Assembly: GCA_964270895.1 (NCBI GenBank)
Contig: OZ185436.1
Source of the DNA: Podarcis filfolensis
Lineage: Eukaryota
Reading direction: 5' to 3' (one strand)
Length of the DNA stretch: 64,000 nucleotides
Shown one piece after another: positions 711-63,958 of the stretch. Made by a program: the position numbers and the translations under genes. The notes below the pieces were generated by a model. That model did not search any database. It was not told the origin of the DNA and worked only from the letters and a program-made list of their open reading frames with translations. How positions within the stretch are numbered: position 1 is the stretch's first letter; each line of letters opens with the position of its first letter.

Positions 711-1114
711 TTTTATGACAATCTGGTTTTAATGGTAGATGCAAAAGACCTGTGCTTTTGACTCTTAAGATCCATTGTTTGTAACAGGCAAATTGAGCTG
801 GAATAAGTTTTCTTCCTTTGCTCCAACCTGTGACTCCTTGCATTCTGTGCTGTTGATTGTGACTGGCATGGTTGGCTGTTTGACCTATCATATTGTACAT
901 CCGAGAGTATGTAGAGCAAACTTTTCTCTGCTCCTCTCCAGGTCACTCTCTCTTATTCAGCGTCAGGCATAATTCATTTTTGAGTTCTTTGTTCATCTAC
1001 CATGTTGCCCTTTTTATTCACTTGTATACGCATTACATTTCCTGATCAAATGAAATAAAAAGATGTTTAAGTCACATACATATAGAACAGACATTTTCTT
1101 TATTTCTTTGTATA

Positions 1115-1328
1115 CAGTGGTACCTCTGGTTACATACTTAATTCGTTCCGGAGGTCCGTTCTTAACCTGAAGCACCACTTTAGCTAATGGGGCCTCTCGC
1201 TGCAGCTGCGCGATTTCTGTTCTCATCCTGAAGCAAAGTTCTTAACCCGAGGTACTATTTCTGGGTTAGCGGAGTCTGTAACCTGAAGCGTATGTAACCT
1301 GAAGCATATGTAACCCGAGGTACCACTG
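1115..1328. mobile_element. Tc1/mariner (Tigger/pogo-like) MITE
   Basis: TIRs CAGTGGTACCTC...GAGGTACCACTG, TA flanks, internal GTAACCTGAAGC repeats. Confidence 0.9.
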
Positions 1329-2404
1329 TATAAGAGTTTTACATCTCCAGGGGATAAAATGCAGTAGGTGATTTCAAACCTCCTTTAGTTCTTTATGGCA
1401 ATTTTGACTCGCCCTTTTCAGTTGAGAGCCAATTCTGTTTTAATGTTTGGCTAGTCTGTTGGGCCTTTTCCTACTACTTGTTTTCTTACTTTTTCCATTC
1501 TTTTAGTGTGTGATCAAAAATCTTTAGCCCTCTCAAAAATACAAGGGTACAGCAATCTGTGCCAAAGCAGCCATTGTAGTGCTGACCCTGTTTACTTCAA
1601 TAATTACCTGAGCATTGCCTCAAGCCATTAATCAAGTGGTGCAGTTTCCGGTTTAATGTCATCCTGCAGCATCTGTAACAGCTGAAGGCAGATATATGTC
1701 ACTTTGCTCCTCTCGCATTTGTTCTGTAATTGACAGTCTGCTCCTGCCAGGCCTAATTATGATCAAGCCTGTTTTACTGTGAGTTCTCTACAAGAAAAGG
1801 CTTCACCTAGACTAATTTTAACTATTAAGATGGATACATTGGTGAGGATGTTGTACCTAAAATGTAGCGATTATCATCTAATGCTGCGGTAGTCCGTAAA
1901 TGAATTCCAGACGAAGGTTTTGTTTTGTTGGTAGTGTGCACTTAACATTCGCCAAACTGTCAGAGATAGCAGTGAGGTGGTCTAATGTCAGTGAAGTTAC
2001 ACAATATTTTCACCAGTACAAATTGATCTAGAATGTGTTTCCTCTGACACAGATGGAAGCTCTTGCACAGAATGTGTGTTTTATCTTACCCCTGCAATGA
2101 GGGATTATTTATTATTAGATTATTAGCTTAACTCGCCATGCTTGTTCTATATACACACATCTCAAATTTGTGCTCTTTGAGAATAGCCTGTTTGGGTAAA
2201 TCTGGCTTATGTGCATTGGGTTTTGTTTCTGTTTTACTCTCAAGTCATTAGCTTCAATAAAATCAGTGAACATGCTCATTTTTACAGAATAAGAAGGGTA
2301 ATGAATTGGTCGTTCTTGTAGCATAAATGGTAATGATTTCATGAATGTGTGAGGATGAAGTCCTTACAACATGGGTGCAATTTGTATGTATGTCTTATGT
2401 TAGT

Positions 2405-6002: not shown

Positions 6003-7387
6003 TATGTCACCTCTGTATACTTAGGCAGTGATTGCTCTTGGTAATTAGTATCCATATAAAGTTTAAGTGAAGTTAGATACCTAATGTGGATTAATATATG
6101 TGCAATGATTGTACTGAGAGTGAATATCTAGGCAAGGTAATTGAAACACTGCTCCTGACCACTGGGATTCCTGCTCTTCTTTCTTTTCCAGTCATGTTTT
6201 TGTCCCACTTTCCCTCCAAAGAACTTAAAATGGGCTACCTGTATTGATCCTGTTCTGTCTTAGTGATGACCCTGTTTGGTAGTTTAGGCTAAGAGATGTA
6301 CTGCTTGCTGGCATGTAATGCTAAGAACTTAGTCCTTATGAGCAAACATTCTGTCTCCTGAAAAGATCACAGGCACTTTGCTCCTCCCCTGCTGTTTTGC
6401 TGCTGAGCTAGACTAAGCCATTGTTTGGTTTAGCATGTCGTCCAACTCTGTTTTAAAAGAAAATAAGTTAAACTGAGGCAGCTGACTTACTGATCATTTT
6501 TTCCTTTATATATATATTATGATTATTCATAAACACAACAGTAAAAAAACAAATAGAGGAGGGCCTGCCATCGAGGAGCTTATAGCCTAATATAAAAGGA
6601 GGATGAAAAATATTGCATTAATACAGATAGTGGTCAGACTGACTTTAAGAGTCCCAGTTACACAGTAGCTTCTGCTATATTTCCAGCTGATCCACAGGTT
6701 ACTACTTCATGGTTTCTTATTGGAATTAAAGAGAATTTGCTTAAAACTGCAGCAATTAATCATGGTAAGGTCTTGCATAATGTTTTTAAATACTTTTAAA
6801 TTTTGAGAAGTTTCTCTCTTCTTTTTTTGTCTGGCTGGGTTGATACTTTGAGTACGCACATCTGATCGCTTAAATAAATGATCAAACATAACAAAAGCCT
6901 TTGATTTTGGTGTTTGAACTGCTCTTGATAGTAAAAAATATTCAGGAGTACCGGTATATGATTAAATTGGCTCAAGCCATTGGAAACTCTCGTTTAACAT
7001 TATGGCAGACTGTTCTATTGATGGCTATGAAGATTTTATGATTACATACAGTTATTATCTCACAAAGCTAAATGCTATTGCATGGAAAAGACCCTCCAGA
7101 GATATCTACAGAACAAGGGATTAATGTGCAATTCTAAACCATTTGAAGATGGAACAGTAAGGCAGCCACAGAGATAATAAAGTTTAAATTGCTCATGTAA
7201 ATCTTTGAATGTTGGAATTTAATCACATCAAAGATCAAATGAATCGGCTAATAGCTCCCCTGATAGAAAAAGAAGACCCAAATGATTTACTGTTTCTCAA
7301 GATGGCTGATCACAATAATAATTCATTGGTTCTTTTTTCTTAGCTATAAACAAAAGATGATTTTGCATTTGAAACAATAGTTTATTA

Positions 7388-7523
7388 CAGGCATATGCAA
7401 ACTCCGGCCCTCCAGATGTTTGGGACTACAATTCCCATCATCCCTGACCACTGGTCCTGTTAGCTAGAGACGATGGGAATTGTAGTCCCAAACATCTGGA
7501 GGGCCGGAGTTTGCCTATGCCTG
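7388..7523. mobile_element. Palindromic hAT-type MITE
   Basis: CAGGCATA...TATGCCTG termini, near-perfect fold-back, perfect 8-bp TSD GTTTATTA. Confidence 0.9.
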
Positions 7524-9085
7524 GTTTATTAGGTAGGCAGCATTAAGAAATAAACAGGTCCACTGTGGGGCAGTTGTCAAATGTCACAAGAGTATAACAC
7601 CCAACTGTGTGATGCTAGTAGTGCCTGAGAACGAAATGAACTCTGCTGTTCTGAGGGCCCCTAAATGTGGGGAAGCAGAGCTACATGTATAAATAAATAA
7701 GTGTGCATCACCTGTCCTTTCCTTTAGACTTTTCTTTGCCCATGAAAATCAAATTCAAGTAATAGCTGCAGTATCTCACAGTGCTGTGTTAATGGCTTTT
7801 TCTTCCTATTATGTAACAAAATGGTGAGATCTCTATGTCACACATGGATCCCTAACACAGTTCTCATTTAGGAGATTCTTTATTCCTTCCATTTCCAAAC
7901 TGAGCTTTTCAACTGCCAATTGAGGGACTTGCAATCTGAGTTTGATTCTCATGCCTGGTGGAAAATGCTTTATAACTAAAGGAAAAGGTGAAAAATATCA
8001 AAACTAGGATTGCTGCCATGATGGGAAGAAACCCAAATATTAGTTTAAAGGTCACATTTATTCCAGCACATGCTGACTCCTGACATATTCCAATAAATCT
8101 TATGTTGAGACTTTGAAAAGATCAGCAAAGATTAGTTTTAGTGAAGTATTTAGATGAATGTACAATGCAGTGAAGCAACAAGGGGGTGTCAGGGATGGAA
8201 TTATTCATTATCTGGGAGGATGGAAAAATCATCACACGAGGAAACTGGCATGTCCAAAAAGGCTTCATTTCAGCATAGGCCACGTTCCCATTTATTTCTT
8301 ATTTTCAAAAGGTTATAAACACGACATAAGATTTAGACTGAGCATCCCATTCTCCACATCCCCACCCTGAAAATATGTTTTGCTGTTCAGAAGAAATGTA
8401 TGTTATAATCACACTTCAAGTGGTACAAATTGTACCACCTACATGATCTTTCTCTGCATATTTATTTATTTATTTATTCCATTCCATTATATTATATTTG
8501 TTAGTCACTTGTCTCTCCCAAAGCAACTTACATCAAAAGCAATTAAAAACAACCAAGTAAGAAACCCAAAAACAAAGCTATACAAGTAAAAGACAGGACT
8601 AATATAAACATGGCCCAGTAAAAGAGGACTCATTGCTGCCCTTCAAAAATTAAGAGAAAAGCCTTTGCTTCTATAGGTGGGTGGCTCTATCTAGTTTTCT
8701 CAACAAGCACAATGAACGTGTTCCTTTAAATTACTTAGAATTCCAGTCTCTCAAACAAAAGAGCCCCACAGCAAATTAAGTTGCCTGGCTAAAGTGACAT
8801 GTCTTCTACAGGCACTTTCTGAAACGTTTCAAGCCTTTCCCTGTGCGAATGCTCCTAAAAGCAGTTGGAATGTGTTTGTCCCACAATAGCTTACCGTGCT
8901 GTAAAAATGAAACCAATTGATTCTAAGATTCTGTATTTCATCTTCAAAGTTCTTAGATTTGGGGCAGTGGAGAAGATTTGAAAACTTGTCTATGATCCTT
9001 GAAGAGGCAGAAAGTAGAAAGGAATCTCTGAAATGGTAAACTTATGAGTGCAAGGTGTTTTTATTATTATTAAAGGAAACTGTTG

Positions 9086-17184: not shown

Positions 17185-17760
17185 GGGTACTTGGGGTTGT
17201 TCGGCTCCATGCTGATTTCAATGTGGGGATGCCACAGGGCTCAGTGCTGTTCAACATCTACATGAAGCCACTACAGGGCTTTGTTGTGCATTTTTTTACC
17301 CTTCTAATTGTATTGCTGTGTTTTTCAGCTTCTATTGTTTTTAATTTTGTTTTAATGTGAGTCACTTCAAGTTATTTAGTAAGAAAAACACCATCAGCAT
17401 TGGCATAAAAATAATTGTCAGCAGTATGTTGATGATACGTGGCTCTGTTTCTCCTTTACACCTGCTGGTGTGGCACTGGATATGCAAGGCCAGGCATAGG
17501 CAAACTTAGCCCTCTGGATGTTTTGAGACTACAATTCCCATCATCCCTGACCACTTGTTCTGTTAGCTAGGGATGATGGGAGTTGTAGTCCCAAAACATC
17601 TGGAGGACTGAGTTTCCCTATGCCTGTGCTAGGCCAATGTTTGGCATCGGTAATGAACTGAATCTTTATCCCGATAAGACTGAGGTGCTGTTAGTGGGTG
17701 ATTCCCTTGGATGGGGTTAGACTCCCTCTGAAGGAGCAGATGAGCCCTGTTCCTGGATGT
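17185..17760 (+). mobile_element. Degraded L2 reverse-transcriptase fragments (interrupted)
   Basis: Translates to GMPQGSVLFNIYMKPL, LNLYPDKTEVLLV and LDGVRLPLKEQ, which are typical L2 ORF2 motifs. Confidence 0.75.
17491..17626. mobile_element. Palindromic hAT-type MITE (same family), nested in a degraded L2
   Basis: Same termini; 8-bp TSD TGCAAGGC/TGCTAGGC. Confidence 0.88.
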
Positions 17761-19473: not shown

Positions 19474-22400
19474 CTAAGGTCCCAGAATGTGATCTGCCAT
19501 GCAGGACAGTTGCAAGATGATGGTGCACCAGGAACCTATTGCCAGATCAATGTTGTCTGCATTGCCATAGTGCTCTCCTCTACTGATTTGACATCAGCAG
19601 CAACAGCAAGGATGTGCTTACCAACCGGAAGGATTAGGCAGTCTGCAGAGAGGAGGAGGGAGGTCCTTTTTTTGTTGCTGCGGAGTGATGCCTGGAAAAG
19701 TCATAGTGCTTTGCATGTGATGCGCAAACAGTAAGCAACATGCTTGATGGTTCTTGCATTTGCTTCAACAGATGTGTCTATACACATCTCTCTGTCTCTG
19801 TCTCTCTTTTGTATTGCTATGTGGCAACAATATGAATCTTCTCCCAGAATTTGACTTGAAGTGCTAATATCAAACCACACTTTTGCTTAACCAAAAAGAA
19901 ACAAGGAACTGATACTATTTTTCTCAGCTGTTTTTAATTGTGAGCTTTTACTCAAGAAATGTACTCCCCCAGCTGTGCAAGAAGAAAAGTGGCAGTCACG
20001 CTATGCATGTTCCCCCACCCTAGTATGTCTCCTGGCCAAAATAAGTTGAGGAGCACGAATAGCCCAAAGAGAACTACGTTGTGGCCTAGGGATATGGAAC
20101 TGATTGCGGTATGAAGTGCTGCAGGCTCCCACCAAACTGATCTACTGTGCACAATGTGAAGATTAAACGATGAACAGTCGCAGATTCTATCACTAAGATG
20201 TCTCCATCTGCCCCCTCAGTTTGGAAAACTGATTGACTCATTTACTTGCCCCATTTTGCCAAAAGCTGGCTCTGTGGCTCAGGGACTGTGTGTGATGGAC
20301 CAGTAGCTACTTTTGTGTCTTAGGGTTTATCAGTATTTGCTGATGACCCCAGGCAGTAACAGGAGCAGAGCCCTCAGTTAGGGAGTAGGCAGGCACCCAG
20401 GTGGGAATCCAGGTACATGATGTAAGACAGGGAAGAAGACACTAGAGGCAGTTGCAGTGCCAACAGCTGCTGCTTACGTGAGAAGGGTGGGACAAGTAAA
20501 TATGCCTTCTGGAATGGCCATCTTGGTAGGAGACGGGTTGTTCAGAATGATGAGGAAGTCCCAGGACTAAGGCTCTATTGAGCTAGGCAAAGATTCATTG
20601 GCTCCCTAGGCTGGGACAGCTGCCTGAGTGCTGTTTCAGCTGGTGGGACCTGTAATGCTGTTTATGTGGTACCCACAACTCCTTCAGTGGAGATGCTGCC
20701 TTGGTGGCAAGATGTTGGAGCCTGCTGGAGGTCCTGGTTTGAGACCCCTAGCACCTTTGCAGGGCTTTTTTCTTTTCTTTTCTAATGCTTTATTGGAACT
20801 TCAGATATTTTCCCTGTGCAACTGTCCCTCAAAAGGATGTCAGCCATGCTTATGTCAGCAGTTTCCTGCATGCAGATGTTACTGCCTTCCTTATCAGTGG
20901 TAGCTCCGCTTTTCTTTGCATGTTATGTTTATCAGCTTTGCTGTAGACCGAAGGACTCTGGGAGTTTGATTTTCACATCATGAGAAATGTACAGATCCAA
21001 GCATGGATCTGTATTCTCCTTCAATGAAGATCTAACCTAAAGATGATAACCTCGCTCTGGACAACAGGTATTTTGTTACATTGTGTAATTATGTACAGAT
21101 ATTTTTTTTAAGTGTATAGGAGAAAAACATTATTTATTATTATTTTAAGGGAATTTTTATTTTCCCATGGACGTCTTCTGAGTTTAGGAGCTAAAACATT
21201 TTCATTAGTGTTTTGTTTTTTATTTAAAAAACAGTTTTATTTTTCTGTTGCCATGTGACAGCTATTCACTGTTTTAAAAGAAGAAGGAAAAGACAGCTTT
21301 TATAACAAAACAAATGCAATTCAAAGGACATTTCATTGGTCTACTCTTGTTGAGAGGATGAGTCTATGGCTTTTACCCTGGTGTTGCTCTGCAGACTCTT
21401 GTTGCTTGTGCAGCTGGCCCCAAACTATGGGGACTTAGAGTGCTATTTTACTGTGCCCAGTCTCTGCTGTACACAGGTGCAAAGCGTACTTCATTCTGCT
21501 GGGTAGGCTCTAACCAGCCTGTGCAACTAGCTTTACAGATTAGCGTAACCCAGCTGGGGGTGGGGAGAAATCCTTTGGATATTTTGCATGCTCGCTGTTG
21601 TGTGCTGCCATACCCAAAGGGAAGTGAGCAGAAGCATGAGCTTTATGAACCCCAGAGAAAACTAGACTGCACGATCTCACCAGTGTTGTAAAGGCAGAGG
21701 AGCTAAAATGGGCCACCCGTGTGGCCCTGTGTTGAGACTAAGTGATTCACTTCTTTCATACTTGTCCTGCTCCGCAGAAACTAGAGAACCTGGAACAATG
21801 ACATATCAGCTGCCAAATTTACATTTTAACCTTCCTCTTCACCACCCACAAGGCCAGCCCATGCTGCTTTGTTTTTGAGGGGAAGCTGCCACTACCACCA
21901 CATTACACATCATATTTTGCCTGCCCCTCCACCTCTATGGGCAATTCTGGAAGTTAGCCTTTATTCTGCTGCCCTGCACCCTGTCTATGTCAGATGACAG
22001 CCAGCAGATTGCTTTCATCAGGAAATCCAGCCATCTTCACCTTTCATTGAAATATTCTTCCTCCTCCCAACCACATGGGAGCCACTTACTCACAAGAAGC
22101 TCCTGTGTGACTGAAATGACCAAACCATGTGAAGAGGCAATACTTGCTTGCATCTTTCTCATGGAATGAGCACCATTCCAGGAGCAGGTATAGATTCCAG
22201 GAGAAAGACCTACCCAAGCAGCCCTGCTTGGAGATACAGTGGTACCTCGGGTTAAATACTTGATTCATTCCGGAGGTCCGTGCTTAACCTGAAACTGTTC
22301 TTAACCTGAAGCACCACTTTAGCTAATGGGGCCTCCTGCTGCTGCCGCACCGCCGGAGCACGATTTCTGTTCTCAACCTGAAGCAAAGTTCTTAACCTGA

Positions 22401-22870
22401 AGCACTATTTCTGGGTTAGCAGAGTATGTAACCTGAAGCATATGTAACCTGAAGCGTATGTAACCCGAGGTACCACTGTAATGCAGCTTTTACATGGCTG
22501 CATGCAGTGCTTTTTCTGGGGGTACACATACCCCTAAACATTTTGTGAATCTAAGTTTGGCCTCATTGAGGGGCAGTATTTCAATATGAGTAGGAAAATG
22601 AGAGTACCCCTAAAGATTTTTTTAAGGAAAAAAAGCACTGGCTGGATGAATGTCTAAAAACTACCTATATGGTTTTTTAAAATGTATACTATGTCCAATA
22701 ATCTGAAAACCAAATTTCATTAAAAATTGTGTGGGTCTGGGATTTGTGCCACTGAGAGCTCATATGTAAGCTTGGCTGAATTATATTATTGTGAACAAGT
22801 GCAGACTCCTTTATCTGACATATTTGGAGGACATGATTTCCTGTTGAATAAAACAGTGTTTTATTGACAA
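19474..22870 (+). other. HTR4: Probable HTR4(a) 3' UTR; end uncertain
   Basis: Follows the stop. AU-rich block at about 21070-21260. First AATAAA I found is at 22847-22852, with more at 23220-23225 and 23343-23348. Confidence 0.4.
22237..22478. mobile_element. Tc1/mariner MITE, same family as 1115-1328
   Basis: Same TIRs, TA TSD, near-identical body with an extra internal segment. Confidence 0.9.
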
Positions 22871-40718: not shown

Positions 40719-40819
40719 CTGGATATGGTCATCCTCAATCACAGGATCGCTGGTGCTTGTGGACTTGTCGGCCGTCCGTTTTCGCTTCACTGAATGCCTG
40801 GGCTTTGGTTTGGTCGCTT
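40719..40819 (-). CDS. FBXO38: FBXO38 exon 16: [34 protein letters not shown] (basic NLS-like KRKR)
   Basis: 101 nt, CAG/GTAAGG, phase 1-0. Confidence 0.96.
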
Positions 40820-41010
40820 CTGGGAACAAAAACAAATGAATAAAAGATTGGACATTTCTTATTTGTGAGCAGCTGTAACAGGAATTGCAGAGTCATTGTG
40901 AATGGTTTCTTAGATTAATGAGGGTCTTGGAAGTAGCTGGCCTGCAGTGTTTAGTAATTGTTGTTATTTTCGGTTTATACTGAATACATTTTGCTACACT
41001 TATATATTGT

Positions 41011-43400: not shown

Positions 43401-44171
43401 TTTGCATTTCTTTTTTAAAAAAATAAAAATAAAAACCCACCTAAATACAGCACCCTTCAGATGTTGGGGGACTCTCACCCCCCCATCAACCACAATCATC
43501 AAAGCTAATGGGAGCTGGGGCCCAACAACATTTGGAGGGCACAATGTTGGCTCTCTCAGAATTACAGACAACATGTAAGAAGTTATTTTGATTAGGGAAA
43601 CCTCTAGCTTAGGTTGTAATAAAATTAATAGACCTTAATCATTAAATAACAAACAATCATTAAATAGTCACTAAACCAAGTGAGGTTTAGTGACTATTGT
43701 TTTTCAGTTTTAATAACCAATATTTTTCTTTAGGTTACCATCACCCTTTTCCTCCCACCATATAAAACAGCAGTGATCCTTTCAACACTCCGAGAAAAGG
43801 AGCAAATCTCAATATTTCATGTATCGATGCTGAACAAAATTAATTATTTTAACTACTATAATTCAAAGTACTTAAAGCAAAGAATACGAAACTGATAATT
43901 TCTGAAATATATGTGTATGTGTGTGTGTGTGTTCTTGGTATAAGCTTTCGTGTGCAAATTCTTCCCACTCCCCCAAAGTAATTTTACTCTTGGAAAACAA
44001 ACCAAAGACCTGCGAAAGCAAGACGTGCCTCACCAAATAAGCACTTGAATTTTGGAGGGTAAAATGAAGGGAAGCCTTAGACTATGGAGGCAGAATGAAC
44101 ATGAGTACACATGTGCTTACGCTGTTACTTTCAAACAAAACATGCAGTAGGATTGCCATATTACATGTTGT

Positions 44172-44192: not shown

Positions 44193-46062
44193 CGGGAAAC
44201 TCCACCCATCAATCATTCAAAGTGGGTAGACAAAATGCATTACAGGATAATTAATTCACATTAAGAAACGTGCACTATCGCTTAAAGGTACACATATGTA
44301 GTTGCATGTTGGTATGGCAGAATGTGCCCCAAAGGTCAACAGAATGTTAACTTGGGATGAATGTAGGCCTACTGCTGCAGTGAGCAGAAGCAGAAATGCA
44401 ACATGATCTTCCCAACTGCTTTGCACACACATGAACATCAATATGACCAGGGCCAACAAGTTACAATTTGAGGCCACCTGGACACCCTAAGGGGCAGCAT
44501 CTTGCTCCCAAACGTAAGCTGCATCTCTGAAAAGTAGCATGAGATCTGGCACAAACCAAAGCTGGTGATGGGTAGTGGAAGTGTGTTAGCTTTCCCTGCC
44601 TTTTTGCCTGCTGGGTCATGACAACGTACCTTCCGCCATTCCTCTTCTACTCAGAGCTGTATGGAGCAACAAAAGCTTGTCTCGGCCTCTACCAGGTAGC
44701 TGGAACCTCAGGGCAGCTCTAAGGGACAAGCTTTCTCTATGCCCTTCCAGCTCAGTCTCTGCCTGCTTGGTGGCTGAAGCTCCACCTCCTCAACAGGCGC
44801 AGAGAAAAAGCAACCATGCCTATGTCACAGCGGGAGCCATCCTCTGAGCCAATCTGATTGATAGCGTCACTCGACTGGTGTCTTGCGAATGAGTCTTTCT
44901 GGGTGAAAGACTCTGACCTTAGTTGATGATCTCCCAAACCGGAAAGAATCACCTTGAATTGGAAGTCATTATCTGGTCTTGCTATGTTTAAGGGAAACTG
45001 CTCTGAGAAGAAGTATGCAGCAAGAAAAATATCTCTTCTGATAGGAACGACTGAAAATGAATGATTTCCTGGAATCTAACGGGTTTTTGACAAGCACACA
45101 TTTAGGAGCGAGTCTGAATCAGTCCTGCCTTTAATCAGGTTAAGGAATAGCGATCCTTTTGATTTAATTTTGCTTGGAGTTATATTACCTTGTGATTATA
45201 GGATAAATGGAATAGAGAGAGAAGTAATTATTATTTTTTTATAAAACTGTTCTAGAATATATGACTTTTGCACTGCTCTCATTAAATATGTTCCTAAATT
45301 TCTTGCAATTATTTTAACCATGTTTTATGTAAATATATATTTTTGTAATGGGAGCTGGGTGACAAGTCTGCTGAACCTACCATTTATGTGCCAAACAAAG
45401 CCTCAGCAGAAGGTTGCTCCCTCTCATGGGTGAAATACCAGTTAAGCCCTGATTCCTGGAACTAACTCCTAACTGGAAGGTATTCATAAAAACTTCCTGA
45501 AAGCGGCTATAAATGTGGCATCTGCACCGATCTAATGCAGTTCCGAGCCAGAAGTTTCTTTTTGCTCTCTGCTTACACTCAGCAACGCTCCCAGTCTCCA
45601 GCTCAAGAACTGGAAGGAAGACTTGGACTTGTTCTGCATCCCAGAGCCTGGATGGGCCATCACCTAAGATGGCTGCACCCAGCATAGAACTGCTCTACGC
45701 TTTCAAAAAACATATACCAGAAACAATATGATTTAGGTGTGGTGAGAAGTTTCAAAGGCTTATGTGATCACAGAATCCAGTCAATATTCACCAAGTAGCT
45801 ATCAGTAAGCTTATGTTTTCATTTTGAAAGCAGGCTTCAAATCAGTTTATAAGTATTTGTATTTCAAGGAATCTCCCCCCACAAAAAAATACTCTCTCAA
45901 AGAGCCAGTGCTCAATTATCAACACCCAAAACAAACCAACACAAGAACAACAGAGAGAAAATGGCATTTCTGCTCTGACATTACGATAATGTGGCTGGTC
46001 CTCGCCCTTCTTTGACAATAATAGACTGCTTTGATGCAAAACTTGGATAAATGAAACCATAC

Positions 46063-46761
46063 CTGACTGAGACACCAGAGGCACATGGGAAAGTCTGCTT
46101 CTGGCTCTCGTGAGAGGCCTGCGAGGGTAATCTTCATTATATTCCATTTCGTATCTCCCTTGCTGTGAAGGAGGGCTCCGTTCCTCATTAGCAGTCCCAC
46201 AGACTCTCTCATTAGTCCTCCCATTGCTGGCCTCTCCTGAAGAGCCACAGTTTGGTAATGTTCTTAGGGAGAATTCTGCCCCTCTCACATTTGGCCCATT
46301 CATACCACAAGCTCCACTGGTAGATGGGCATTCGCCACCCGAGACGCCATTAGTCCTCCTTTGCTGGTTCTGGGGCATATAGCAGGAACACCTGGAGCAC
46401 AATGGCTTCTCCTCACTGTCCCTCTCGCTGGAGCTTTCACTCTTGCAGAGACACTTCCCAGAGTCCTCTGTTGCTGCGGAGGGAGCGTCACTGCCGCTAT
46501 CAGCCGTTTTCATACCATCTGGGCTTGGAGACGCTGCAGTGTCCGAGGCCCCCGGAGGCCCAGTGCCGCCACCACAACCAGGGTAACAATCCTTGCTTTT
46601 GTTCCTTTCCGCTGTCACGTCACTGGCCGCTTTCATATCCGCTTTAATTTGCTCACTGGTGACCTGACAGCCTTTCTCGCAGCTGCTCTCCTCAGAAAGA
46701 AACAGTTTCACCCGGCTGGCATTGCACCTCTTCCGCAGCGGAGCTTTGCCTTTACCGCTCA
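46063..46761 (-). CDS. FBXO38: FBXO38 exon 15 (large, Ser/Gly-rich): VSGKGKAPLRKR...EDYPRRPLTRARSRLSHVPLVSQS
   Basis: 699 nt inside ORF 45842-46816; CAG/GTATGG; phase 1-1; conserved motifs EESSCEKGCQVTSEQIKADMKAA and RRPLTRARSRLSHV. Confidence 0.96.
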
Positions 46762-46980
46762 CTGCAACAACAACAAGGACGAAAGGGAAGAGAGCTACGA
46801 TGTGATAGAAAGTCATGGAAACGCACCCTGTTAGTTATCAACACACCCCAGACAACCTGGTGAGACACCTGCTGCGACTGTTGCAACATTATTCCAAGCA
46901 GGAAAAGATATTGTGCAGATATGTTGAGTTACTTCACTTACTAGAGGTTCACGCCTTGAATCAGTATGTTTAAGCATATT

Positions 46981-61699: not shown

Positions 61700-63189
61700 C
61701 TGAGAAGATGACACATATTTTATCTCTGAGGAAGAAGAGAAGTATAGATATGCAAGGAAGACGGATGGTGCAGTTTACAATCCACACATAATGGAGCAAG
61801 GATTTGTGTTGCTTTCTTTGTTTTATTTTACCCCACATGCATCACCACCCATGCTTTGGACAAACGCAAAAAAGAGGAACCATATACTTAATTTTGTTAT
61901 TCTAGAACTCAAATTCTAGAGCTCAAAGGCAAGGCTAGAGAACTACAAAAGTACTTCACTGCTTAGACAACAACAAAAATTTGAGTACATACAAGAAGAG
62001 AGTATGGTTGATTAGTCAAGTTTTGACAGAAATAAGAGTACTCAAAAAGGTGGAATCTAATTTGGACATGATCCAGCTAAAGTTATGCATTTCCCCCACT
62101 GTGGATATAAGCTGAAGATGCTTAATTTGCAGAATAAGAGGGGACTAAAATGCTTTGACTAAGTTATGTCAACTTTTTTTTTACAATCCTTTTGGCACAA
62201 ATATATGTTGGCTTCCCCACCTCCCCATTTTGTAATTGAGCACATTATGTTACTGCTCATATACTCATAATACACTGTTTGACTCATTTTTCCTGCTAAC
62301 AAACCAAGGCCACCTGTCCCTTCATTCTTTCAGCCATTCTCATTTCCCCTTTTAAAGTTGGGTACCATATTTTCTTGCTTTGGACTATTATAACTGTCCC
62401 CAGCCTTCCTGGCTCAAGATGATCTTCCTCTTGTTTCTATGTGCATCCAGAAAACAGCAACTAAATTTTTATTAGGCATTTTAAATACTGATTGTACTTT
62501 ACAATCATTTGGGGTGGGTGGGTGTGTAAGCTATTTCACCATCAGCAGGTTTAGAACAGGAAATGAAGGGTTGTCTATTAATTAGATAAATCATGTAAGG
62601 AATGGCTTTTGAGAGATATCATAGCAACTACACAGTATTTTGACATGCAGAAAACATGTCTTCTTTTGTATTTTCCATTGTCTAAGTCAGTGGTTTCAAA
62701 TTTTCTGTTTTCAAGAAACTCTTCACTGATTTGTCCAACAGAAAGCACTGTCTTAAAGAGGACTCAGTGCATATTTTAGGCTATACACAAAGTTCACATG
62801 GGACATGGCCGAGCCTCCTGTGCCTCACTGTTGCCCTTCTTGAACCAAGTGCTCAACTAAAAACACACCAAAACACACAGGTACATAAGGCAGAAGATTG
62901 GTAATAATAGACAAGATATTTAAGAAAAGCTTATCTGCCATTACTGACCTCCTCAGTGGAGAATACAATGTGACATATATTGCTCTAAGCCTACACCTTT
63001 CCCCCGCCCCCCTTGATACTGTGTTTTTATATTTTTGGCATGTTTTATTGGTGGCTCCTTATTTTGTACTGCTATTATGATTTCCTTTAAAATGAAACCT
63101 ATACAAAGGAAAGAGGAAGGCCTCCATTTTTAATCTCTCAGTTCTAGAAATCTTGGTACACAAACATTTGAAAAAAAATTGTTCTAGAT

Positions 63190-63325
63190 CAGCCATAGGC
63201 AAACTCCAGCCCTCCAGATGTTTGGGATGACTATTCCCATAATCCCTAGCTAACAGGACCAGTGGTCAGGGATGATGTGAATTGTAGTCCCAAACATCTG
63301 GAGGGCCGGAGTTTGCCTATGCCTG
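63190..63325. mobile_element. Palindromic hAT-type MITE (same family)
   Basis: Same body; perfect 8-bp TSD TTCTAGAT. Confidence 0.9.
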
Positions 63326-63958
63326 TTCTAGATAGGCACTAAGTAATACCATGGGGTGGGGAAATAAGAACAGCCACAGCGGCAAACTTCGGTCCATGCA
63401 CATGTAGGGTTTTCAGAAGTTTTTAATTCCATAACTTTATCTAACAATCTTTGGCAGAGGGATCATTCAGTCCAGCAAATTCAAAGGATAGTCTTGGGCA
63501 AGTCACTCACTCTTGGCCCCAGTTCCCCAGCTGCAAAATGGGAGGTATAGCATCATCTTGCATAAGGTTGTAGTGAGAACAAGGAAGGGTCACATCTGAT
63601 ATTGCCATATTGTCCATCAGAGTGCACCTGCAAGTCACAAAAGGGAATGACAAAAAAAGGCATCAGAGGGACTTCTGCCATGTCTCCTTGTGAACTGAAG
63701 ATGGGTAAAAGTCCTTCTGCTGCTCCAATTCTTATCAAAGGAGTGGCTTGAGGATGCACTCCTATGAATAGAAACAGTTGCTAGCACTGGAAGGGGTCCT
63801 GAGAAAATACTCCATAAAGCCATGGTGCATGCAAAAAGTGCTATAGAAATTTAGAATCCATGAAATGCTTTTTAAAAACAATGGCTTGTAACAGCTATAA
63901 TTTAAAAGCATAAGATATACTGCAATGCATCACTACCCTGATTAAGAGCAACACTCAC

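What the first reader, a model, noticed from the sequence alone, without database searches (positions are those of the whole stretch)
44630..44880. Hidden exon in FBXO38 intron 15 ending in a strong-Kozak ATG in frame with exon 16: candidate internal start for an F-box-less decoy isoform
Seen (- strand): ...GAAGAGGA ATG GCG GAA G|GTACGT, with ATG at 44639-44637, G at -3 and +4, and the donor at 44629. Phase 1 joins exon 16 exactly ([18 protein letters not shown]...), giving 924 nt of ORF = 307 aa with the basic NLS-like motif and the conserved C-terminal domain but no F-box, LRR-like region or disordered middle. A CCAAT box (44849-44853) and a TGACG half-CRE (44869-44865) lie about 210-230 nt upstream. 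The same frame is open for 53 codons, so acceptors at 44788 (GAG, good pyrimidine tract; 159 nt) or 44773 (CAG; 144 nt) would instead give an in-frame cassette. Known: FBXO38 is an SCF substrate receptor (reported partners include KLF7 and ZXDA/B), and F-box-deleted receptors act as dominant negatives. Inference: an internal promoter could produce a built-in antagonist of SCF-FBXO38.
Basis: partly seen in the sequence, partly recalled or inferred. Interest (0 to 1): 0.7.

Follow-up and report, generated by a model that had tools for sequence, protein, structure and literature searches.

The report
Young cassette exon, not internal start

Summary
All quoted letters and coordinates are correct (ATG 44639-44637, donor GT 44629-44628, phase 1 into exon 16 at 40819; 53 open codons).

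The decisive evidence is a public protein. P0159 (UniRef A0A670JEW5, Podarcis muralis FBXO38, 1172 aa) equals the canonical protein plus a 29-residue insertion exactly between exons 15 and 16. The window's equivalent is 44716-44630. The "start" ATG is therefore an internal Met codon of a cassette exon.

Nothing supports an internal promoter:
- There is no CpG island.
- The CCAAT box is deleted in Zootoca, and TGACG reads TGATG in the three relatives.
- The exon is no better conserved than the intron around it.
- The ATG-to-GT spacing is one base shorter in Rhineura (wrong phase), and the pair is absent in Elgaria and Python.
- No short FBXO38 protein in the searched collection starts this way.

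In this species the acceptor is weakened (GAG, with a frame-breaking TAG 2 nt upstream). In Zootoca it is absent.

Verdict: an ordinary, lineage-restricted, neutrally evolving alternative exon. Low interest.

The parts
44630..44716 (-). 87-nt in-frame cassette exon (window equivalent of P. muralis L001:22332-22418). It would insert 29 residues between exon 15 and exon 16.
   Evidence: P0159:840-868 is the insertion. The L001 exon translates to it exactly, and the window exon is open in the same frame.
44717..44721 (-). Acceptor region TAGAG. The AG at 44718-44717 corresponds to the CAG acceptor of P. muralis but has G at -3. A competing TAG (44721-44719) 2 nt upstream would shift the frame onto a TGA.
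   Evidence: P. muralis reads TTACAG|, the window TTAGAG|, and Zootoca TTACGA (no AG).
44624..44632 (-).
   Evidence: It is the same site as the end of the P. muralis cassette. It is kept in Zootoca as AAG|GTGCGT and in Rhineura as GAG|GTGTGT, one base closer to the ATG.
44637..44639 (-). In the P. muralis model it is an internal Met codon, third from the end of the cassette.
44849..44869 (-). The ATTGG/CCAAT box (44853-44849) and TGACG (44869-44865) proposed as promoter elements.
   Evidence: The letters are confirmed. The box lies in a 28-nt stretch deleted in Zootoca, and TGACG is TGATG in P. muralis, Zootoca and Rhineura. CpG observed/expected is 0.24-0.32.
44551..44944 (-). Old single-copy intronic block that holds the exon. 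It is present at the orthologous spot in Rhineura, Elgaria and Python and carries a decayed inverted-repeat motif.
   Evidence: nhmmer results, alignment, inverted repeats in Elgaria.
46063..46768 (-).
40719..40819 (-). Exon 16 (101 nt), encoding the NLS-like [12 protein letters not shown] peptide.

Best explanation
The stretch is the 3' end of a young, lineage-restricted alternative cassette exon of FBXO38: 87 nt at 44716-44630 on the minus strand.

This adds 29 residues to the disordered linker just before the basic NLS-like motif. The ATG is simply a Met codon inside that exon.

Inferred:
- The exon arose by chance creation of splice sites in an old, neutrally drifting intronic block.
- It is used at low or tissue-limited level, since NCBI's isoforms X1-X4 lack it.
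- In the window's own species its use is less certain. The acceptor has changed from CAG to GAG, and a TAG lies 2 nt upstream that would put a stop codon in frame.

It is not a promoter-driven first exon and does not make an F-box-less protein.
For: - **Protein model.** P0159 (UniRef A0A670JEW5, P. muralis, 1172 aa) is collinear with canonical P0117 and identical apart from three substitutions, the first-residue mismatch and a 29-residue insertion at the exon 15/16 junction.
- **DNA.** On P. muralis DNA the insertion is an 87-nt exon bounded by ...TCTCTTACAG| and |GTACGT (L001:22332-22418).
- **Window.** The window has the same exon, open in frame.
- **Origin of the model.** RNA-seq of five tissues plus embryos exists for P. 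muralis and was used for annotating it (PMC6431182).
- **Neutral evolution.** The exon's identity sits at the 43rd, 62nd and 35th percentile of equal-sized windows of the intron against P. muralis, Zootoca and Rhineura. In the three pairwise lacertid comparisons, 3 of 4, 1 of 3 and 4 of 5 classifiable changes are nonsynonymous.
- **Restricted distribution.** There is no AG acceptor in Zootoca. The ATG-to-GT spacing is one base shorter in Rhineura. There is no ATG/GT in Elgaria or Python, and the block is undetectable in Phrynocephalus and Gekko.
Against: - No RNA reads could be laid, so use of the exon in the window's species is untested.
- Support in P. muralis is one database model whose evidence trail I could not inspect.
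- NCBI isoforms of P. muralis, Zootoca, P. raffonei and P. lilfordi all lack the insertion.
- A search with the exon's own open frame found no protein of 31-100 aa in the collection.
- The window's acceptor is weaker than that of P. muralis.
Confidence: 0.6

Rival explanations
1. Nothing functional and nothing used in this species. The ATG and GT are chance letters in neutrally evolving intron, and the P. muralis model records rare cryptic splicing or is an annotation artefact.
For: - Conservation is at intron background.
- About 0.7 comparable ATG-donor pairs per fitting phase occur along the gene strand.
- The acceptor is weakened in the window and absent in Zootoca.
- No short protein carries the exon's frame.
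- The NCBI isoforms lack it.
Against: A model built without transcript evidence is unlikely to achieve that for a sequence no other species' protein has.
Confidence: 0.3
2. One reading: an intronic promoter (CCAAT box, half-CRE) starts a transcript in about 44700-45000. The ATG at 44639 starts translation of a 307-aa F-box-less FBXO38 that antagonises SCF-FBXO38.
For: - The ATG has G at -3 and +4 and is in phase with exon 16.
- The donor is a real splice site in a P. muralis model.
- The ATG and GT are kept in P. muralis and Zootoca.
Against: - There is no CpG island.
- The CCAAT box is deleted in Zootoca, and TGACG is not kept in any of three relatives.
- The promoter block is 64% identical in Zootoca against 88% for the intron.
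- The phase is broken in Rhineura, and ATG/GT is absent in Elgaria and Python.
- No protein of 167-530 aa starts this way.
- The one model that uses the donor reaches the exon from exon 15.
- Survival of the five letters in the two lacertids is what neutral drift predicts (0.78 and 0.52).
Confidence: 0.04
3. In the window's species the exon is entered through the TAG acceptor 2 nt upstream. That puts TGA in frame and makes it a poison exon, sending a share of FBXO38 mRNA to nonsense-mediated decay.
For: The window reads TTAGAG|CTG, where TAG is a better acceptor context than GAG. Starting 2 nt earlier gives Leu-Pro-stop. Human FBXO38 has a validated low-inclusion cryptic exon with a premature stop in another intron (PMC6634423).
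Against: There are no reads. The change is a single derived substitution, with no sign of selection.
Confidence: 0.05

Closest known systems
Young, lineage-specific alternative cassette exons created by exonisation of intronic sequence
   Same: - AG...GT boundaries arise in non-conserved intron.
- The length is a multiple of three.
- The exon is absent from most annotated isoforms.
- It evolves at the neutral rate.
- It is restricted to a shallow clade.
   Different: No repeat origin could be shown. The block has no second copy in about 350 kb of held sequence, whereas many such exons derive from transposable elements.
Human FBXO38 cryptic exon between exons 9 and 10 (158 bp, 8-13% of junction reads, premature stop; PMC6634423)
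   Same: Same gene, and a low-level unannotated exon inside an intron.
   Different: It lies in a different intron, is not homologous, is frame-breaking rather than in frame, and is documented by reads and qPCR, which the lizard exon is not.
F-box-deleted dominant-negative receptors and internal-promoter N-truncated isoforms
   Same: Only the arithmetic fits: an ATG in phase with the C-terminal 304 residues.
   Different: There is no promoter signature, no conservation, and no transcript or protein model starting here.

Membership tests
Cassette (internal alternative) exon | AG acceptor and GT donor flank the exon | tested here: met
   P. muralis has CAG|...|GTACGT and the window GAG|...|GTACGT. 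Not met in Zootoca, which has no AG.
Cassette (internal alternative) exon | A transcript or protein model joins it to both the upstream and the downstream constitutive exon | tested here: met
   P0159 against P0117 in P. muralis.
Cassette (internal alternative) exon | Keeps the reading frame (length a multiple of 3, no stop) | tested here: met
   The exon is 87 nt and open in the window, P. muralis and Zootoca.
Functional (selected) alternative exon | Conserved above the flanking intron, with an excess of synonymous change | tested here: not met
   Percentiles are 0.43, 0.62 and 0.35. Most changes are nonsynonymous, though there are too few for a formal test.
Alternative first exon with an internal promoter | Transcript 5' ends at the exon | not testable with these tools
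Alternative first exon with an internal promoter | Promoter signature (CpG island or conserved core elements) | tested here: not met
   CpG observed/expected is 0.24-0.32. CCAAT is deleted in Zootoca and TGACG is lost in three relatives.
Alternative first exon with an internal promoter | An annotated or assembled product that starts at this ATG | tested here: not met
   None of the 34 hits of 167-530 aa starts this way. The short forms start inside exon 15 or in the 3' end of the intron.
Alternative first exon with an internal promoter | Start codon and phase conserved in relatives | tested here: not met
   They are kept only in close lacertids, at the neutral expectation. The phase is wrong in Rhineura, and the pair is absent in Elgaria and Python.
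Intronic pre-miRNA or structured RNA | Stable hairpin or a match to an RNA family | tested here: not met
   Fold z-score is 0.03. The only Rfam match at E up to 1 is a 16.8-bit SCARNA7 hit elsewhere.
Transposon-derived exon | Other copies of the block in the genome | tested here: inconclusive
   There is no other copy in the window or in seven loci, but no whole lizard genome could be searched.

The most novel reading that the evidence does not exclude
The exon doubles as an alternative first exon. A weak intronic promoter in Podarcis-like lizards starts transcripts upstream of 44716, and the Kozak-type ATG at 44639 yields a 307-aa F-box-less FBXO38 that competes with the full-length receptor for substrates.
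Probability: 0.04. Interest if true: 0.55.

Novelty: already known. Interest (0 to 1): 0.12.

Why it matters
It matters little beyond annotation. The window's species probably shares a Podarcis-specific optional 29-residue insertion next to the NLS-like motif of FBXO38, and a public P. muralis model already records it. It is a tidy example of how a "strong-Kozak ATG plus donor in phase" inside an intron can be the tail of a young cassette exon rather than a start site. It also shows that conservation at intron background is the quickest way to deflate such a candidate. If the exon proved abundant in some tissue, its position between the conserved RSRLSHVPLVSQS motif and the basic motif could be tested for an effect on nuclear import.

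Tried and rejected
- **RNA reads.** only counted composition and motifs over them locally.\n- **Repeat origin.** There is no second copy in the window or in seven loci.\n- **Known RNA.** Rfam and tRNA scans were blank apart from a chance-level SCARNA7 hit.\n- **Hairpin or miRNA idea.** This was prompted by two-strand nhmmer matches. The fold is no better than shuffles, so I rejected it.\n- **P0060.** This 309-aa protein with 54 members looked like the predicted isoform. Lengths were derived by arithmetic, and database proteins were used instead.

Full report
**1. The observation**

- On the minus strand the window reads GAAGAGGA ATG GCG GAA G|GTACGT. The ATG is at 44639-44637, G stands at -3 and +4, and the donor GT is at 44629-44628.
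- ATTGG (CCAAT on the + strand) is at 44853-44849, and TGACG at 44869-44865.
- Exon 16 starts at 40819 behind a TTCCCAG acceptor and ends at 40719.

A tblastn map against a full-length FBXO38 protein shows the large upstream exon ending at 46063 as TCA G|GTATGG. The canonical junction also donates one G to a G|AA Glu codon, so the phase argument is correct. The frame is open for 53 codons upstream of the donor. The 307-aa figure follows by arithmetic: residues 876-1179 of P0117 plus three.

They are plausible but not verified.

**2. Whose genome, and what could not be done**

The FBXO38 exons are 98-100% identical to those of Podarcis muralis and P. lilfordi, and intron 15 is 95% identical to that of P. 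muralis. The window therefore comes from a lacertid close to, but not the same as, P. muralis.

- The look-up of sequencing runs listed 18 probable RNA runs.

**3. Intrinsic features**

- There is no CpG island. Observed/expected CpG is 0.24-0.32 at 45000-44500, although G+C rises to about 0.5.
- The block is not repeated in the window.
- It matches no Rfam family (one chance-level SCARNA7 hit elsewhere, 16.8 bits against a gathering score of 65) and no tRNA.
Markov simulations give one in 2.8% of introns.
- Along the whole gene strand I count about 0.7 such pairs per fitting phase. For a reader scanning 64 kb, the motif alone is not significant.

**4. Protein evidence**

The exhaustive HMMER search with a C-terminal exon returned FBXO38 representatives.

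Searching the 5.8-billion-protein collection with the C-terminal 303 residues of a database protein (P0012:824-1126, admitting proteins of 167-530 aa) gave 34 hits, and none begins MAEEATK. The tempting one, P0060 (309 aa, 54 members, Logan assemblies), begins MFLFPE. That is the pyrimidine tract of the intron just before exon 16 read through, so it is an ORF call on contigs that keep the intron's 3' end.

A second search listed full-length orthologues. All NCBI isoforms of P. muralis, P. lilfordi, P. raffonei and Zootoca are 976-1179 aa.

I then printed what precedes the exon-16 peptide in every fetched squamate protein. One differed: P0159 (UniRef A0A670JEW5, "F-box protein 38", P. muralis, 1172 aa) reads ...SRRGMAG|[10 protein letters not shown].
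- BLASTP against canonical P0117 shows it is collinear, apart from a 29-residue insertion (P0159:840-868) exactly between exon 15 and exon 16.
- On P. muralis DNA this is an 87-nt exon, L001:22332-22418, bounded by ...TCTCTTACAG| and |GTACGT. Its translation equals the insertion.
- No other fetched FBXO38 protein carries the insertion, so it cannot be a homology projection.
- RNA-seq of five tissues and embryos exists for that species and was used for annotating it (PMC6431182). That P0159 rests on such data is my inference.

The window's equivalent is 44716-44630, open in the same frame.

**5. Conservation**

I fetched the gene from P. muralis, Zootoca, Rhineura, Elgaria, Phrynocephalus, Python and Gekko.

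| Species | ATG and donor at the aligned site |
|---|---|
| P. muralis | ATGGCGGGAG\|GTACGT, same phase |
| Zootoca | ATGGCGGAAG\|GTGCGT, same phase |
| Rhineura | ATGGCAGAG\|GTGTGT, one base shorter, so out of phase with exon 16 |
| Elgaria | Homologous block found by nhmmer (E = 1.7e-19), but neither ATG nor GT at the aligned site |
| Python | Block found (E = 1.1e-06), with an ATG nearby but no donor |
| Phrynocephalus, Gekko | Block not detectable |

- Survival of the five letters in the two lacertids is what the intron's own divergence predicts (0.78 and 0.52).
- In sliding windows the candidate exon sits at the 43rd, 62nd and 35th percentile of intron identity against P. muralis, Zootoca and Rhineura.
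- The proposed promoter is among the least conserved stretches in Zootoca (64% against 88% overall), because a 28-nt deletion removes the CCAAT box.
- TGACG reads TGATG in all three relatives.
- Inside the 87 nt, most of the few substitutions are nonsynonymous.
- The acceptor is CAG in P. muralis. In the window it is GAG, preceded by a TAG 2 nt upstream that would put TGA in frame. In Zootoca it is absent.

**6. What the block is**

The block is an old, single-copy piece of intron found only at the orthologous position in each locus. It carries a decayed inverted-repeat motif (TCTCTGC.CCTGCTGGG / CCCAGCAGGCAGAGA), which explains the two-strand nhmmer matches. The core does not fold better than shuffled sequence (z = 0.03), so I dropped a miRNA reading. 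A transposon origin is possible but unshown.

**7. Verdict**

Its use in the window's own species is uncertain because the acceptor is weakened.
- The human FBXO38 cryptic exon (PMC6634423) lies between exons 9 and 10 and is only a precedent, not a homologue.
- The exon is already in a public gene model, shows no sign of selection and needs no new mechanism, so interest is low.

Noticed in passing
window 40820-40837 (minus strand), and P0060: A cluster of 54 Logan-derived proteins (representative P0060, 309 aa, from another vertebrate) starts MFLFPE. This reads out of the last ~18 nt of the intron before exon 16, probably from a TTG taken as a start by the gene caller, and runs through the spliced exons 16-22. 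The window has the same letters. It suggests contigs with the 3' end of this intron retained, or transcripts starting just upstream of exon 16, in that taxon.
   Followed up: partly
window 44551-44944; L004:20491-20817; L006:25264-25483; L002:31150-31573: The intronic block holding the exon is found at the orthologous position in Rhineura, Elgaria and Python. It matches its own profile on both strands because of a decayed inverted-repeat motif. There is no other copy in about 350 kb of held sequence.
   Followed up: partly
window 7387-7528, 17522-17631, 63183-63332: Three copies of a short palindromic repeat (TTTGGGACTACAATTCCCATCATCCC...), 72-92% alike and in both orientations. It looks like a MITE-type lizard repeat.
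   Followed up: no
window 1112-1330 and 22234-22480: Two direct copies, 92-93% identical, of another interspersed repeat.
   Followed up: no
P0061, P0063, P0009 (mammal-type proteins): Some short or alternative FBXO38 forms join ...VVNGPD directly to the exon-16 peptide. They use a donor inside the large exon and skip its last part.
   Followed up: no
window 43820-43957 (+): A weak SCARNA7 match (16.8 bits against a gathering score of 65, E = 0.26). Chance level.
   Followed up: no
L003 around 24200 (Zootoca) against window 44826-44853: A 28-nt deletion in Zootoca removes the CCAAT/ATTGG box and its neighbours. A further insertion of about 30 nt in Zootoca lies just downstream of the donor region (alignment A2).
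   Followed up: partly
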